Shown here one piece after another: positions 3,162-27,787 of a stretch of 35,289 bases of DNA (its first letter is position 1; each line of letters starts with the position of its first letter). This stretch comes from Octopus bimaculoides (taxonomy: Eukaryota), in assembly GCF_001194135.2 (NCBI RefSeq), contig NC_068984.1, positions 7,381,911 to 7,417,199 of the forward strand, given 5' to 3'. The notes under the pieces are model-generated. The model did no database searches. It saw only the letters and a list, made by a program, of their open reading frames with translations, and had not been told where the DNA came from. The translations under genes were made by a program, and so were the position numbers.

Positions 3162-3214
3162 TTGTTTGTACTTGGTCGCAACCGGACACACTCTGGGTTG
3201 GATATATTAAAAGT
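3162..3214 (-). CDS. Candidate internal exon (53 bp, phase 0 to 2): TFNISNPECVRLRPSTN, GAIN/GPS-entry-like
   Basis: Acceptor ttttgtttttag, donor CAA|gtaaga; open frame; N-x-NP-x-C resembles the latrophilin-type NFNPNC; phase-compatible with the 13789..13850 exon. Confidence 0.45.
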
Positions 3215-3273
3215 CTAAAAACAAAACGAAATAAAGAATTAAATTTAATAAATGAAAAAAAAAAAGAAATATA

Positions 3274-3532
3274 CAGTAATCACTCACCACATCTCGTTTC
3301 ACCTACCGCCGTTCACCTATCGCGGTTCACTTATCACAATTCACTTATCGCGGTTCACCTATCACGGTTTGTTATTTAAGCTTCCTCCGTGTTGTTTTGC
3401 ATTTATAATGAAATAAATATATACAAATTATAAAAATAATTTTAAAAATACAGTACAGTTTCTACTTCGCGGATTTTCACCTATCGCGTGTGGTTTTAAA
3501 ACGTAACACCCACGGTAGCCGAGGGATTACTG
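3274..3532. mobile_element. pogo/Tigger-like MITE
   Basis: TA|CAGTAATCACTC ... GAGGGATTACTG|TA termini; five tandem 14-bp TTCACCTATCGCGG-like units (3298-3367) and one more near the right end. Confidence 0.8.
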
Positions 3533-3663
3533 TATTAGAAGTAAATGCAAATATGAGACAAACACTGAAAAGAAAAATGTGTTATTTTAAGAGGTTTAGG
3601 GCTCGGCTTAACCGGAAGTCTTATCAAGGTTACAAAAACGATTGCATTATACTTTTTTTTTGT

Positions 3664-3867
3664 TTTTCTCACTTGTTTTAGTCATCTGACTGCGGCCATG
3701 ATGGAGCACCACATTTAGTCGAACAAATCGACCCCAGGACTTATACTTTGTAAGCCTAGTACTTATTCTATTGGTCTCTTTAACTGAGCTGCTAAGTTAC
3801 GAGGATGTAAACATAAAAGAACATTGGTTGTCAAGCGATGGTGGTGGGGGAACAAACACAGACACGC
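3664..3867 (-). mobile_element. SINE family C, 3' half
   Basis: Reverse complement matches 16181-16370 and 32110-32306, including the tail CATGGCCGCAGTCA..TGACT.AAAC. Confidence 0.85.
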
Positions 3868-4196
3868 AACCCATTTTTATTTTATTTTATTTTATATTGT
3901 ATATTGTATATCATATTATATATTGTATATTCCATATTCTATACCCCACATTAGTTCTGCAGGAATATAAATAAAACATAAAAAACAGACAGTGTTGGAA
4001 CTCTTTTAAGCAAAATAATATATNNNNNNNNNNNNNNNNNNNNNNNNNNNNNNNNNNNNNNNNNNNNNNNNNNNNNNNNNNNNNNNNNNNNNNNNNNNNN
4101 NNNNNNNNNNNNNNNNNNNNNNNNNNNNNNNNNNNNNNNNNNNNNNNNNNNNNNNNNNNNNNNNNNNNNNNNNNNNNNNNNNNNNNNNNNNNNNNN

Positions 4197-4393
4197 ATTG
4201 CCCACAGGGTCCTAGACATAGAGAGGACAAACAGGGACAGAAGACAAAGGGATTAATTCGATTACATCGATCCCCAGTGCGTAACTGGTACTTATTTAAT
4301 CGATCCCGAAAGGATGAAAGGCAGAGTAGACCTCGGCAGACGAAATACCGCTAAGCATTTCGCCCGGTGTGCTAAGGTTTCTGCCAGCCCGCC
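4197..4393 (-). mobile_element. SINE family B (tRNA-derived head) with internal deletion, nested in a family C copy
   Basis: Reverse complement matches 8063-8299; joins directly onto the C 5' half. Confidence 0.85.
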
Positions 4394-4561
4394 GTACGAC
4401 AGGCTTCTTTCAGTTTCCGTCTTCCAAATCCACTCACAAGACTTTGGTCGGCCCGAGGCTATAGTAGAAAACACTTTCCCAAGGTGCCACGCAGTGGGAC
4501 TGAACCCGGAGCCATGTGGTTGGAAAGCAAGCTTCTTACCACACACCCACGCATGCGCCTA
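4394..4561 (-). mobile_element. SINE family C, 5' half (tRNA-like head)
   Basis: Reverse complement matches 35115-35289, with A-box/B-box-like TGGTAAG..GGTTCAGTCCC. Confidence 0.85.
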
Positions 4562-23923: not shown

Positions 23924-24859
23924 NNNNNNNNNNNNNNNNNNNNNNNNNNNNNNNNNNNNNNNNNNNNNNNNNNNNNNNNNNNNNNNNNNNNNNNNNNNNN
24001 NNNNNNNNNNNNNNNNNNNNNNNNNNNNNNNNNNNNNNNNNNNNNNNNNNNNNNNNNNNNNNNNNNNNNNNNNNNNNNNNNNNNNNNNNNNNNNNNNNNN
24101 NNNNNNNNNNNNNNNNNNNNNNNNNNNNNNNNNNNNNNNNNNNNNNNNNNNNNNNNNNNNNNNNNNNNNNTATATATATAAACATAGACAGATGCATGCA
24201 TACAAATACTTACACACAGGAAAGCGCATACACTCACATATATATATAAGCACATTCATACACATGTATGTACAAGATAAAAACTTGATTTATTGAAATT
24301 ATCATTACTTCGAGAGACAGTAAACAAATGCCTGATGGCAATAGCAACCAATGATTCCGAGTGCGAAAGGAAAACAATCCTAATAATTGAGAATTCTCCG
24401 AAATTCACATTACATCTATTTTTTGTTTATTTAACTGTTTATTTATTTATTTATTTATTTATTTATTTATTTATTATCATTTCTATTTATCTTTCTGAAG
24501 ATAAGAAAGAAACGTCAGAATTTGAAGCATAATTATGTTGTTTATAACGAACGTATGTTGACAAATTTGAAATCATGTTAATAAATAAAGAAAACACAAA
24601 CCACGCCCAACTACAATAAAACAGGTAATTATGTACACAGAGAACACTTTATAACCTCAATATGTAGCTGTTTACGTCTAGAAAATTTGATAGCAGATAT
24701 TAGAACTGTTTTTTCCCGTTCCAAATATTATGCAGCTGACTGATTGACAAAAGTTTTGAAAAGACATTAGAATTACAATAAAATTGAGTTTGTTACAGCA
24801 CAAGGCTGAATTGAACATTGTTCTCTACAGATAACTTTGTTTATGTATACGTGTGTATG

Positions 24860-25397
24860 TGTCTATGTATGTATGTATGTATGTATGTATGTATGTATGT
24901 ATGTCTATATGTATCTATCTAACTATCTATCTATCTATCTATCTATCTATCTTTAAACACATACACACACAGACACAAACACACACACACACACACATAG
25001 ACAGACAGACAGACACACACACACACACACACACACACACACACACACACACACACGCATATATATATATATAGAAATAGATCGAATTGAAAAGCAGATA
25101 ACAGAGATAGATAGACAGATAGATAGATAGATAGATAGATAGATTGATTGATTGATTGATTGATTGATTGATTGATTGATATGTAGGTAGGTAGGTATGT
25201 ATGTATGTATGTATGTATGTATGTATGTAGGTAGGTAGGTAGGTAGGTAGGTAGGTAGGTATGAATAAAACATGTTTGGTAGTGTAAAGAATGGTATATA
25301 ATAATATTAATAATAATAATAATAATAATAATAATAATAATAATAATAATAATAATAGTAATAATAATAATAATAATAATAATAATGAGAGTAATAA
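24860..25397. repeat. Compound microsatellite ladder (TATG, TATC, CA, GATA, GATT, TAGG, AAT)
   Basis: Successive short tandem arrays separated by short spacers. Confidence 0.95.
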
Positions 25398-26090
25398 TAG
25401 TCAATAAACTCGCGTGCAGTCGCAGCAGTTGAGTATGGCGCTGGAATTTTGAACTGAAGAGAGGATGAGCTAAAGGAGATGGATAGGAAGTCAAGAAGGC
25501 CCATAACGATGCATGGAGCAGTTGATGGCCTCTACATGACACTGATCGCTTATACATGAAGAGAGCAAATGGCGGAAGAGGACTGATAAGTGTGGAAGAC
25601 TGTGTACATATCGGACTCGACAGCTTAATGAGATATTTAACCCAAAGTAAGGAACGAGGGAGCACTGAAAGCAGAGAAAAAGGGAAAATGAAGGATGATG
25701 TACAAAAGGGACACGAAGAAGAATTGCGCAACAGGGGACTACACACACAATTCTATGTAGCCACAACAGAAGTTGCTAGAAAGAATAGGTGGGGTTGGTT
25801 GAAGAAAGGAACAATAAAAAAAAGAGACCGAGAGGACTATACTGGCAGTGCAAGACCAAAATTTGGCCACAAATTAGAAGGTCAAATTAGAAGGTGTCTC
25901 CGCTGTACCGCATCTGTAACAGAGTGGATGAAACCATTGCCCATATGACAAGCGAACGCCCTAGACTTGCCCAAAACCACTACAAGTTGTGGCAACGCGA
26001 CCAGTTAGTGAAAGTGCTACATTGGAAACCGTACGAAAAGTGGGGACTAGAGAAAGGCAACTCGTACTATGAGCACAAACCGTAGAAATT
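25390..26090 (+). mobile_element. R4/Dong-like RLE-LINE fragment (RT thumb to CCHC), decayed
   Basis: YGAGILN.R.DELKEMDRK, DRLYMKRANGGRGLISVEDCV, WLKKGTIK..E..ILA.QDQ, P.YRICN..DETIAH.TSE.P.LAQ..YK; starts at an (AAT)n tract. Confidence 0.88.
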
Positions 26091-26679
26091 TGCAACCATG
26101 TGACCAGCTTTAAGAGAATCAATAAGAGACATTCAACATGTTTGGTCAATTTTCTATGGCGACAGAAGGAAGCTAAAATTAAATACAACATAACTTGGTA
26201 CATAGTAAGGCATGCAGAACCATACCATATCATTTCCACGAGATACCAACTCTGCTCTGAGGAACCCCTGTCTGTTCTGTAGACCAATCAGAAGGTTATT
26301 AATAGAATTTCTGAAGGACTCACAAGATGCTTACACGCATATAAATGTACTTTTGCACAATGCAGTGGGAATGAATTTGAGTAACTGTTGACAGTTTACT
26401 TTAAGGTATGGATGAATTAAGTCTAGTTTTAACCTCCCCGTTCTTATAAACACATTTTCGCGGATGCTTGTATGTGCGAGGGTGTTTCTACATCCTTATC
26501 CGTTAACAGTTATTTTTACTTATGTCGCTGTATTGCGAGTTCATTTCTTTTTTGCATATGTGATTTTATTTTAGATCTTCCATGTAAACGAAGATATTTC
26601 CTTCGTTTTGCGGTTTTTCTTTCTACGAAATGAGAAGATACATTGCAGAAATGTTATTCTAACGACTTGTATGTATTTA

Positions 26680-26960
26680 TCACCCAACGAAACACATCGG
26701 CACCGCCGATACACAACAGTACCACCACCATCTCCACCACATCTGCCATCGATACACACCATACAAACGTCTGACGCTACCACCATCAATACCTTTGAAT
26801 TTGCCGCCTTTCCCCCCATCACCATTACCACTTTCTTTCACATCGTTTACTGTCACTTCATCCCTCAACGCCTCGGCTACCACCATCACCACCAACACCA
26901 TCATCATCATCGCCGCCTCCGCCTCTATCACAAATTCAGCTTATACTATTATTATCACCC
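26680..26960. repeat. Degenerate (CAC/CAT)n tract
   Basis: Triplet-rich low complexity. Confidence 0.8.
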
Positions 26961-27717
26961 CATTACTATCACAAAAAGGCTAAATATGTGTGTTTGTTAA
27001 GTATGTTACATCAGCCTGTTAGTGCAGTGGTCAGGCCCTCTTTCTCTTACACACCCACTCTTTCTCTCTCTCTCTTATTATTACTCCCACTGTCACCATA
27101 AACTCTACTAGTTTTAATAAAAGCATCAACTCTCCTTAAATTTCTTTGTCTCTCTTTCTCTCCTTCTTTTTCTTTCTCTCACTCTCTCTGTTTTCGCCAC
27201 TACCTTCATCGTCTCTATGCTTACTGCTACTCTCACCCCAACATGAGCAATAGTAAGAGTGTCAAGGAATAGTAAGAGACGAGAGTCGAAATCTGACAGA
27301 CTGACACACAGAACTTAGTTTCCGCATTTATTATATTAGATGTGTATATATATCTATATATATATATGTGTGTGTGTGTGTGTGTGTGTGTGTGTGTGTG
27401 TGTGTGCGTGTGTGTGTGTGTGTGTGTGTATGTGTGTATGTGTGTGTGTGTGTGTATCGTATTCGGATTCAAGCTGACAAACACGCACACACACACATAC
27501 ACACATCTCCAAAAGATACACTAACATTAGCAAGTCTTAGGTATCACGTTGAAATTAAATATCTTGTGATACATTCACCGCACTATTAACTGTGACACAT
27601 TTCGTATCCTAGAGATAAAATGAAGTTTATCTCAAGTTAGATGCTACAAACAACATTGTAGGTGGCTACAAGTTAGGTGCTTCAAACAAATTGTATAAAG
27701 TAAATAACTGTACTCAC

Positions 27718-27787
27718 CTTTTAAAAAAATGATTTGGTAAAACGCGGGAAAACGACGGATACAGAAATGTGGCCACACCAACGAAAA
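27718..27787 (-). CDS. Candidate internal exon (70 bp, phase 1 to 2): FVGVATFLYPSFSRVLPNHFFK, GAIN-domain-like
   Basis: Acceptor gatttctttacag, donor AAG|gtgagt (full consensus); the V..LY.[ST]...LP pattern resembles a CELSR/latrophilin GAIN strand. Confidence 0.45.

What the first reader, a model, noticed from the sequence alone, without database searches (positions are those of the whole stretch)
3162..27787. Hidden minus-strand GAIN-domain (adhesion-GPCR-like) gene built from 50-70 bp exons across ~25 kb of repeats
Seen: three short exons with strong splice signals (27718-27787, 13789-13850, 3162-3214), none called as a protein in the correct context by the ORF track. In transcription order they read FVGVATFLYPSFSRVLPNHFFK ... 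KEKITENLTSPVIISLPYLD|TFNISNPECVRLRPSTN, and the last two join in phase. Established: GAIN domains of latrophilin/CELSR-type receptors show V..LY.[ST]L..LL, NL..PV.[IF], then NP.C just before the GPS W..GC. Inference: these are consecutive GAIN strands of an adhesion GPCR or PKD-like protein. The atypical CVRL (instead of C.FW) may mark a divergent, lineage-specific, possibly non-cleaving family. The GPS and 7TM exons would lie left of position 1.
Basis: partly seen in the sequence, partly recalled or inferred. Interest (0 to 1): 0.75.

Follow-up and report, generated by a model that had tools for sequence, protein, structure and literature searches.

The report
Annotated octopus adhesion-GPCR GAIN exons

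Summary
Exon 2 starts at 13903, not 13850. The exons 27718-27787, 13789-13903 and 3162-3214 (minus strand) then join in frame to give FVGVATFLYPSFSRVLPNHFFK-R-TKENNINTPVVALYLHIEKEKITENLTSPVIISLPYLD-TFNISNPECVRLRPSTN. This string is 100% identical to residues 591-668 of the Octopus bimaculoides RefSeq protein XP_014771943.1 (1055 aa). RefSeq names it "cadherin EGF LAG seven-pass G-type receptor 1"; its gene spans 356 kb. O. vulgaris is identical over these residues, Argonauta differs at two, and decapodiform transcripts are 90% identical (pN 0.059 against pS 0.79). The protein has an EGF-like region, a pentraxin/LamG domain, HormR, GAIN and a 7TM domain. It has no cadherin repeats, so the CELSR1 name is misleading; the closest solved 7TM domain is ADGRD1. 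The three exons encode four beta-strands of GAIN subdomain B, up to the first GPS cysteine. No assembly gap interrupts an exon, and independent relatives show no residues missing between the exons. The "atypical CVRL" is a signature of the whole family, which occurs in molluscs, a brachiopod, nemerteans, an annelid and hemichordates, so it is not lineage-specific. The cleavage position P+1 is glycine in every member examined, so non-cleavage is plausible. The gene is not hidden or new.

The parts
27718..27787 (-). Coding exon A (70 bp). Encodes (V)FVGVATFLYPSFSRVLPNHFFK(R), residues 590/591-612 of XP_014771943.1. Begins with 2 bases of a split Val codon and ends with 2 bases (AG) of a split Arg codon. 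Forms predicted beta-strand 591-599 of GAIN subdomain B.
   Evidence: Exact 6-mer tiling of P0048. Splice sites ctttacag| and AAG|gtgagt. Third-best family HMM hit in the window, E=0.27, model positions 550-572. Strand assignment from the AF2 model.
13789..13903 (-). Encodes (R)TKENNINTPVVALYLHIEKEKITENLTSPVIISLPYLD, residues 613-651. Forms predicted strands 623-629 and 643-648. Lies in a 412-bp sequence island between two assembly gaps.
   Evidence: Family HMM E=3e-10. An HMM of the vertebrate CELSR exon scores E=2.7e-4 and is the only significant segment in the window. The PDB hit to the CELSR1 GAIN domain includes an identical INTPVV.
3162..3214 (-). Coding exon C (53 bp). Encodes TFNISNPECVRLRPSTN plus 2 bases (AA) of a split Asn/Lys codon, residues 652-668. 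Forms predicted strand 655-663, which carries the first GPS cysteine (C660).
   Evidence: Family HMM E=5e-4. AF2 model.
13904..27717 (-). Intron between exons A and B, about 13.8 kb, phase 2. Contains six N gaps (1463 N in total), an RT-like ORF series that looks Penelope/LINE-like by eye (Pfam found nothing), SINE-like copies and microsatellites.
3215..13788 (-). Intron between exons B and C, about 10.6 kb, phase 0. Contains four N gaps (1514 N in total) and dispersed repeats. Vertebrate CELSR genes have no intron at this position.
27788..35289 (-). 3' part of the upstream intron. No further exon of the gene was detected here.
   Evidence: No 6-mer of P0048 matches here. No family HMM hit better than E=8.
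1..3161 (-). 5' part of the downstream intron. Contains a mariner/Mos1-type transposase remnant on the plus strand. The alternative 30-nt micro-exon and the GPS/7TM exons are not in this stretch.

Best explanation
The window is an internal 35-kb piece of a very large (about 356 kb) Octopus gene for an adhesion GPCR of about 1050 residues. The protein's architecture is signal peptide, EGF-like region, pentraxin/LamG domain, HormR, GAIN and 7TM, with a C-terminal ITSV motif. The three minus-strand exons encode residues 591-668, which form four beta-strands of GAIN subdomain B and end just after the first cysteine of the GPS motif. They are separated by two repeat-filled introns of about 14 and 11 kb.

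Shown:
- The exons match the annotated protein exactly.
- Exons are spliced collinearly in an RNA-derived contig from a related cephalopod.
- The exons are under strong purifying selection.
- The domain architecture and the fold are those of an adhesion GPCR.

Inferred:
- The family carries Gly at GPS position P+1 and lacks the His-Leu|Ser/Thr triad. The GAIN domain therefore most likely stays uncleaved, as in ADGRB2/B3.
- The receptor would then signal without NTF/CTF dissociation. The strongly conserved Stachel-equivalent strand (x-G-V-[FY]-A-[IVL]-T-T-D-M-Y-N-x-N-W) would stay covalently attached.
- An alternative 30-nt micro-exon sits directly downstream of exon C, outside the window. It inserts a loop of about 10 residues, predicted to be flexible, between GPS strands.
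For: - An exhaustive HMMER search with the 78-aa splice product found 13 proteins at E<=1e-3. The best is Patella vulgata XP_050390445.2, E=4.5e-14, aligned over query residues 1-73, that is, across both splice junctions.
- A profile search with seven homologues returned the O. bimaculoides protein P0048 (XP_014771943.1 and two newer XP accessions with the same sequence), which contains the 78-aa string exactly.
- Its 90% cluster holds O. vulgaris and Argonauta hians models.
- The gene range is 356 kb in GCA_001194135.2.
- The decapodiform contig L015 (5177 nt with an uninterrupted 1054-aa ORF, so RNA-derived) is collinear across the junctions. Over 76 codons there are 53 of 228 nt differences, with pN=0.059 and pS=0.79.
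- Pfam on P0048: 7tm_2 E=5e-35, Pentaxin and Laminin_G_3 at about 1e-18, a weak HRM hit, no Cadherin. The decapodiform orthologue P0044 hits GAIN at 397-626, E=4e-9. The mollusc and hemichordate homologues tested hit GAIN, and all homologues tested hit HRM and 7tm_2.
- PDB by sequence: best match ADGRD1 at 1e-35, then ADGRL2/3; the PTX domain matches neuronal pentraxins.
- The AF2 model (mean pLDDT 71) places the exons on strands 591-599, 623-629, 643-648 and 655-663.
- Foldseek: BAI3 HormR-GAIN TM 0.73, uncleaved BAI2 0.72, latrophilin-1 0.67; CELSR1 and Gpr126 extracellular regions also match.
- GPS alignment: P+1 is Gly in all 22 family sequences. The consensus cleavage triad and the TxFxxLM agonist consensus are taken from the review PMC13197933.
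- The exon A/B junction (Arg codon split 2|1 just before INTPVV) and the exon C donor (phase 2, 7-8 residues after Cys-Val) have the same phase and nearly the same position in vertebrate CELSR genes.
Against: - Neither the 78-aa peptide nor the O. bimaculoides protein itself reaches a reported Pfam GAIN hit. No family member tested except Saccoglossus hits Pfam GPS.
- Exon A alone is weak: E=0.27 against the family HMM, and not significant against a vertebrate-only HMM.
- The octopus gene models are computational. No octopus RNA reads were examined here; the transcript evidence comes from decapodiform assemblies.
- Exon B sits on a 412-bp island between gaps, so its placement depends on scaffolding.
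- Non-cleavage is inferred from sequence only.
Confidence: 0.96

Rival explanations
1. The three 'exons' are chance open frames bounded by AG and GT in AT-rich repeat DNA, picked out because they loosely resemble GAIN motifs.
For: - Each open frame is short. In exon C the acceptor AG and the donor GT are part of the flanking TAG and TAA stop codons.
- No Pfam hit.
- The word-indexed protein search found nothing.
Against: - 100% identity to residues 591-668 of an annotated protein.
- E=4.5e-14 to a limpet protein, aligned across both junctions.
- The top three family-HMM hits in the window are these exons, in collinear order.
- pN/pS of about 0.07 against a decapodiform transcript.
Confidence: 0.01
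2. The gene is the octopus orthologue of CELSR/Flamingo (ADGRC), as its RefSeq name says.
For: - The only PDB sequence hit of the exon peptide is the CELSR1 GAIN domain, E=0.083, with an identical INTPVV.
- Two intron positions and phases are shared with vertebrate CELSR genes.
- After the family members, the next-best profile hits are CELSR proteins.
Against: - The protein is only 1055 aa and has no cadherin repeats; its N-terminus is an EGF-like region plus a pentraxin domain.
- The full-length protein matches ADGRD1 and ADGRL2/3 best in the PDB.
- Automated names for orthologues vary between CELSR1, ADGRL2-like, latrophilin and latrotoxin receptor.
Confidence: 0.05
3. The exons belong to a decaying pseudogene or a polycystin-1/PKD-like GAIN protein rather than a functional adhesion GPCR.
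For: The GPS region is atypical: CVRL replaces C-x-F-W, and there is no Pfam GPS hit.
Against: - The ORF is intact in three octopod models and in many decapodiform transcripts (31 cluster members, contigs of about 5 kb).
- Selection is strongly purifying.
- The downstream domain is 7tm_2; Pfam reports no REJ, PLAT or PKD-channel domains.
Confidence: 0.01

Closest known systems
ADGRD1 / GPR133 (adhesion GPCR subfamily D)
   Same: N-terminal pentraxin/LamG-like domain, then GAIN, then 7TM. It is the best solved-structure match by sequence over the GPS plus 7TM region (E=1e-35), and the 7TM fold also matches.
   Different: This family has an extra HormR domain and an EGF-like N-terminus. Its GPS lacks the His-Leu|Thr triad, whereas ADGRD1 is described in the literature as generating NTF and CTF fragments by autoproteolysis (abstracts listed). 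Orthology was not tested by phylogeny.
CELSR1-3 / Flamingo (ADGRC)
   Same: HormR-GAIN-7TM module. The GAIN strand INTPVV... is shared. Two intron positions and phases are shared. RefSeq uses this name for the gene.
   Different: No cadherin repeats and no EGF/LamG array. The protein is about 1050 aa, against about 3000 aa for a full-length CELSR from my own knowledge (the solved CELSR1 chain is a 2232-residue construct), so the name is a best-hit artefact.
ADGRB2/ADGRB3 (BAI2/BAI3) HormR-GAIN
   Same: Best structural matches to the predicted HormR-GAIN region (TM 0.72-0.73). The review PMC13197933 reports these GAIN domains observed in the uncleaved state. That is the behaviour predicted for this family.
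   Different: The N-terminal domains differ (thrombospondin repeats in BAI, pentraxin here). Sequence identity is low (17%).
Latrophilins (ADGRL1-3)
   Same: HormR-GAIN-7TM. The 7TM domain is second-closest by sequence. Many orthologues are auto-named 'ADGRL2-like'.
   Different: Pfam reports no rhamnose-binding lectin or olfactomedin domain, and the GPS is non-canonical.

Membership tests
Adhesion GPCR (class B2) | Secretin/adhesion-type seven-transmembrane domain (Pfam 7tm_2) | tested here: met
   P0048 residues 731-963, E=4.9e-35. ADGRD1 and ADGRL 7TM structures match by sequence and by fold. The domain lies outside the window.
Adhesion GPCR (class B2) | GAIN domain directly N-terminal of the 7TM domain, containing the window's exons | tested here: met
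   Pfam GAIN hits the decapodiform orthologue P0044 at 397-626 (E=4e-9) and mollusc and hemichordate homologues. The predicted fold matches BAI3, BAI2 and CL1 HormR-GAIN structures with TM 0.67-0.73. The exons map to strands 591-663. Pfam GAIN is not reported for the O. bimaculoides protein itself or for the 78-aa peptide.
Adhesion GPCR (class B2) | [quoted passage not shown] | tested here: not met
   Octopus has C-A-C-H-M-Q-G-V-Y-A-I-T-T-D-M, and P+1 is Gly in all 22 family sequences aligned. The consensus is taken from PMC13197933. Some accepted family members, such as ADGRB2/B3, are also observed uncleaved, so this does not exclude membership.
CELSR / Flamingo (ADGRC) | Array of N-terminal cadherin repeats followed by an EGF/LamG region | tested here: not met
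   No Cadherin family hit at E<=1 in P0048 or P0044. The N-terminus is an EGF-like region plus a pentraxin domain, and the protein is 1055 aa in total.
ADGRD (GPR133/GPR144) | Pentraxin/LamG-like domain + GAIN + 7TM, and phylogenetic grouping with ADGRD1/2 | tested here: inconclusive
   The architecture is compatible and ADGRD1 is the best 7TM match. No phylogeny was run, ADGRL2/3 score almost as well, and HormR and the uncleavable GPS are differences.
Polycystin-1 / PKD-like GAIN proteins | REJ, PLAT and polycystin-type membrane domains after the GPS | tested here: not met
   Pfam finds 7tm_2 after the GAIN domain and no REJ, PLAT or PKD-channel domains.

The most novel reading that the evidence does not exclude
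This pentraxin-HormR-GAIN-7TM receptor family is conserved from hemichordates to molluscs, and every member examined has an uncleavable GPS (Gly at P+1) next to a very strongly conserved Stachel-like strand. It may therefore be a natural, ancient example of obligatory non-dissociative adhesion-GPCR signalling. In coleoid cephalopods, a conserved alternative 30-nt micro-exon supplies a Trp-containing loop of about 10 residues between GPS strands, directly after exon C. It might tune GAIN stability or exposure of the tethered agonist. I found no description of this family in the two literature searches and the passages of four papers that I checked.
Probability: 0.3. Interest if true: 0.4.

Novelty: already known. 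Interest (0 to 1): 0.15.

Why it matters
For the scan, this is a positive control. A reader working from raw sequence recognised GAIN-domain strands in three tiny exons spread over 25 kb of repeats. The result also shows that an ORF track designed for prokaryotes misses split eukaryotic genes.

Biologically the gene is not new; RefSeq, GenBank and UniProt already hold it. Three points are modestly useful:
- The RefSeq name 'CELSR1' is misleading, because the protein has no cadherin repeats.
- The family appears to lack GPS autoproteolysis across several phyla.
- Cephalopods carry a conserved alternative micro-exon inside the GPS region.

The last two points would interest adhesion-GPCR specialists working on cleavage-independent activation.

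Tried and rejected
It returned 'no candidate shares three 5-residue words', yet P0048 contains the whole string and P0005 shares eight 5-mers. That tool's negative results for short queries are unreliable, so I did not use this one as evidence.
- **Pfam on the concatenates.** No hit. The fragment is too short and divergent, so this does not refute the finding.
- **Motif scan for a GPS exon, C-x-C-x-H-L-[ST] or W...GC, in all six frames.** Only noise. CSCSHLHLV at 14220-14237(-) and SCTCHRISSFEV at 33005-33115(-) are out of order, and the latter scores only E=8 against the family HMM. I rejected both as chance.
- **Vertebrate-only HMM of the upstream CELSR exon against the window.** Exon A was not significant (E=14). 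It was confirmed only with lophotrochozoan homologues and the octopus protein.
- **Translated comparison with vertebrate CELSR contigs L001-L014.** No further exons found.
- **Search for additional exons of the gene in the window.** None found.
- **Fetching the O. bimaculoides locus DNA.** I therefore could not locate the micro-exon or the GPS exon relative to the window.
- **Pfam on ten repeat-derived ORFs.** Only the Mos1 HTH domain was recognised.

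
Full report
**1. Observation**

The three stretches are in the sequence as described, on the minus strand. Exon 1 (27718-27787) reads (x)FVGVATFLYPSFSRVLPNHFFK and is bounded by ctttacag| and AAG|gtgagt. Exon 3 (3162-3214) reads TFNISNPECVRLRPSTN and is bounded by gtttttag| and CAA|gtaaga.

Exon 2 as drawn (13789-13850) is too short. 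Its frame stays open upstream to the acceptor tcttctctttcattgaag|G, which gives 13789-13903 (115 bp) and the reading (R)TKENNINTPVVALYLHIEKEKITENLTSPVIISLPYLD. With this boundary, the two spare bases AG at the end of exon 1 and the first G of exon 2 form an Arg codon, and all three exons join in one frame.

**2. Assembly gaps**

No N run touches an exon. Exon A lies in ungapped block 24171-35289. Exon B lies on a 412-bp island (13689-14100) between two gaps. Exon C lies in block 1-4023. All ten N runs of the window fall inside the two introns, with 1463 and 1514 N. Reading frames therefore do not depend on the gaps; only the intron lengths (about 13.8 and 10.6 kb) and the placement of the island do. 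Independently assembled relatives have no extra residues between the exon equivalents, so no constitutive exon is hidden in a gap.

**3. First tests**

The latter proved to be a false negative of that tool.

A search of PDB sequences with the corrected exon B + C peptide gave a single hit among 177,635 sequences: the GAIN region of CELSR1 (8vy2_A, E=0.53), with INTPVV identical. Adding exon A improved this to E=0.083 and extended the alignment.

A small profile search retrieved vertebrate genomic ORFs for the homologous CELSR exon. In their contigs the next exons hit Pfam GPS and then 7tm_2. The equivalent vertebrate peptide hits the C-terminal end of Pfam GAIN, positions 153-209 of 210.

**4. 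Decisive evidence**

An exhaustive HMMER search of 1.84 billion representative proteins with the 78-residue splice product found 13 proteins at E<=1e-3. The best is Patella vulgata XP_050390445.2 (E=4.5e-14), aligned over query residues 1-73, that is, across both splice junctions.

A 988-position HMM of seven non-cephalopod homologues was searched against all 1618 six-frame open segments of the window. Its top three hits are exactly the three exons, all on the minus strand and in collinear model order: positions 550-572 (E=0.27), 576-625 (E=3e-10) and 616-631 (E=5e-4). Nothing else scores better than E=0.59.

A profile search then returned the Octopus bimaculoides RefSeq protein XP_014771943.1 (the same sequence also carries XP_052822835.1 and XP_052822836.1), named 'cadherin EGF LAG seven-pass G-type receptor 1 isoform X1' (1055 aa). 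It contains ...SPVFVGVATFLYPSFSRVLPNHFFKRTKENNINTPVVALYLHIEKEKITENLTSPVIISLPYLDTFNISNPECVRLRPSTNN.... Exact 6-mers of this protein tile residues 590-668 onto the three exons and match no other minus-strand sequence. The only other 6-mer matches are two stray single hits on the plus strand, in low-complexity sequence.

The same 90% cluster holds O. vulgaris and Argonauta hians models. The gene spans 356 kb in assembly GCA_001194135.2. The gene is therefore already annotated. The window most likely comes from O. bimaculoides or a very close relative. This is an inference: the O. vulgaris protein is identical over these 78 residues.

**5. Expression and selection**

A second cluster of 31 sequences comes mostly from contigs of about 5 kb assembled from public sequencing runs. 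It also includes a fragment from the cuttlefish Acanthosepion pharaonis, so I treat the cluster as decapodiform. The contig L015 carries an uninterrupted 1054-aa ORF and so derives from spliced RNA. It is collinear with the three exons. Over 76 aligned codons there are 53 nucleotide differences but only seven amino-acid changes. pN is 0.059, and pS is 0.79, which is saturated.

**6. What the protein is**

| Test | Result |
|---|---|
| Pfam on the octopus protein | 7tm_2 at 731-963 (E=5e-35); Pentaxin and Laminin_G_3 at 105-273 (about 1e-18); weak HRM; weak EGF; no Cadherin; no GPS |
| Pfam on the decapodiform orthologue and other homologues | the decapodiform, mollusc and hemichordate sequences tested also hit GAIN above threshold (Lingula does not) |
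| PDB by sequence | closest is ADGRD1 (1e-35), then ADGRL2/3; the N-terminal domain matches neuronal pentraxins |
| AlphaFold2 model from a 27-sequence alignment | mean pLDDT 71 |
| Foldseek on that model | BAI3 HormR-GAIN (TM 0.73), uncleaved BAI2 (0.72), latrophilin-1 (0.67); the extracellular regions of CELSR1 and Gpr126 also match |

In the model, exon A forms strand 591-599. Exon B forms strands 623-629 and 643-648. Exon C forms strand 655-663, which carries the first GPS cysteine. Three more strands follow (690-716), and TM1 starts at 733.

The RefSeq name is not: this is not a cadherin-bearing CELSR.

**7. Gene structure compared with CELSR**

In four vertebrate CELSR contigs, the exon before INTPVV ends after two bases of an Arg codon, and the next exon supplies the third base. 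The INTPVV...CVFWNHS exon ends in phase 2, seven residues after Cys. The octopus exon A/B junction (AG|G = Arg, five residues before INTPVV) and the exon C donor (phase 2, eight residues after Cys) have the same phases, within one codon of the same positions. The phase-0 intron between exons B and C has no vertebrate counterpart. This suggests two ancient introns shared by the HormR-GAIN-7TM modules of the two families. That is an inference.

**8. The 'atypical CVRL' and cleavage**

I aligned the GPS region of 22 family members: octopods, decapodiforms, gastropods, bivalves, a chiton, Lingula, two nemerteans, Owenia, two hemichordates and two unnamed sequences. They were aligned against a bird CELSR.

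- Nearly every member has C-V-x-[LIVM] (Owenia has C-R-R-L), and none has the canonical C-x-F/Y-W. CVRL is therefore a family signature and is not specific to cephalopods.
- At the cleavage site, the canonical C-x-C-x-H-L|T-x-F-A-V-L-M is replaced by C-x-C-x-x-[PQLT]-G-[VILTHF]-[FY]-[AVS]-[VILA]-[TL]-T-[DN]-M. P+1 is Gly in every member.
[quoted passage not shown] With no Ser or Thr at P+1 (nor Cys), these GAIN domains are predicted not to self-cleave.
- The following segment, TTDMYNxNWDKG, is very strongly conserved. This fits a Stachel-like strand that stays attached and non-dissociative signalling, as discussed for cleavage-deficient receptors in the same review. This mechanism is inferred, not shown.

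**9. Seen in passing: a micro-exon**

Isoforms X1 and X2 of the octopus gene differ only immediately after exon C. X1 reads ...RPSTN-N-RVFNQWTMT-T-GEKNRW..., and X2 reads ...RPSTN-K-GEKNRW..., so a 30-nt cassette exon separates them. The decapodiform transcripts have the same alternative, NPVFTEWTMSTA against K. No non-cephalopod member in the alignment carries the insertion. The model gives this region pLDDT below 50. The micro-exon is not in the window.

**10. Verdict**

The finding is a real feature and its biochemical reading is essentially right. It is an ordinary piece of an already annotated gene that has annotated orthologues across Lophotrochozoa and Hemichordata. Published surveys of adhesion GPCRs have already included O. 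bimaculoides (PMC6900090, PMC6408891). Novelty: already known. Interest: low.

Noticed in passing
outside the window, immediately downstream of exon C (left of position 1); seen in P0048 vs P0079 and P0044 vs P0083: A 30-nt alternative micro-exon encoding (N)RVFNQWTMT(T) lies inside the GPS part of the GAIN domain. It is conserved between octopus and decapodiform transcripts and absent from all non-cephalopod family members aligned. The structure model gives it low confidence, consistent with a loop.
   Followed up: partly
GPS region of the gene product (P0048 residues ~700-716) and 21 relatives: Every family member aligned, from several phyla, has Gly at the GPS P+1 position and lacks the His-Leu|Ser/Thr triad. 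The Stachel-equivalent strand and the following TTDMYNxNWDKG segment are highly conserved. The family is predicted to be non-autoproteolytic.
   Followed up: partly
window 996-2027 (+): Mariner/Mos1-type transposase remnant. The ORF at 996-1466 hits Pfam HTH_48 (Mos1 transposase HTH). By eye, the 1617-2027 ORF carries the usual C-terminal transposase motifs, but Pfam gave no hit.
   Followed up: partly
window 19600-20900 (+), 25526-25945 (+), 5841-6110 (+): ORF fragments that look by eye like reverse-transcriptase or LINE tails, and like a Penelope-type element. Pfam gave no hit at E<=0.01. They are probably decayed retroelements inside the introns.
   Followed up: partly
window 21068-21590 vs 22483-23071; 2-467 vs 28008-28461; SINE-like copies at about 4395-4566, 18075-18201, 31870-32062, 34178-34374, 35111-35287: Inverted repeat arms of about 530 bp (86-88% identity) flank a segment of about 0.9 kb and may mark a DNA transposon. 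There is a 470-bp inverted pair near the two ends of the window. A dispersed SINE-like family has five or more copies. None of these overlaps the exons.
   Followed up: partly
P0006 (Mytilus coruscus CAC5394731.1) vs window 27720-27758 (-): A mussel protein has an RT-like N-terminus and six tandem repeats. Each repeat contains PSISRVL[ML]NH[FI]MK, which matches exon A's PSFSRVLPNHFFK at 9-10 of 13 positions. The summed repeats gave E=3.8e-13 in the exhaustive search. It is probably a chance match inflated by the repeats; the origin is unexplained.
   Followed up: no
window 33005-33115 (-) and 14220-14237 (-): GPS-like strings SCTCHRISSFEV and CSCSHLHLV on the gene's strand, but upstream of the GAIN exons and so out of order. 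The first scores only at noise level against the family HMM (E=8). I judged both to be chance.
   Followed up: yes
vertebrate loci L001, L005, L011, L014 vs window exon junctions: Two intron positions and phases are shared between vertebrate CELSR genes and this octopus gene: the Arg codon split 2|1 before INTPVV, and the phase-2 donor 7-8 residues after Cys-Val. The octopus B/C intron is an extra one.
   Followed up: partly
tool behaviour: The word-indexed homologue search reported no candidate for a 59-aa query, although a protein in the same collection (P0048) contains the whole query in two exact blocks. Short-query negatives from that tool should not be used as evidence of absence.
   Followed up: yes
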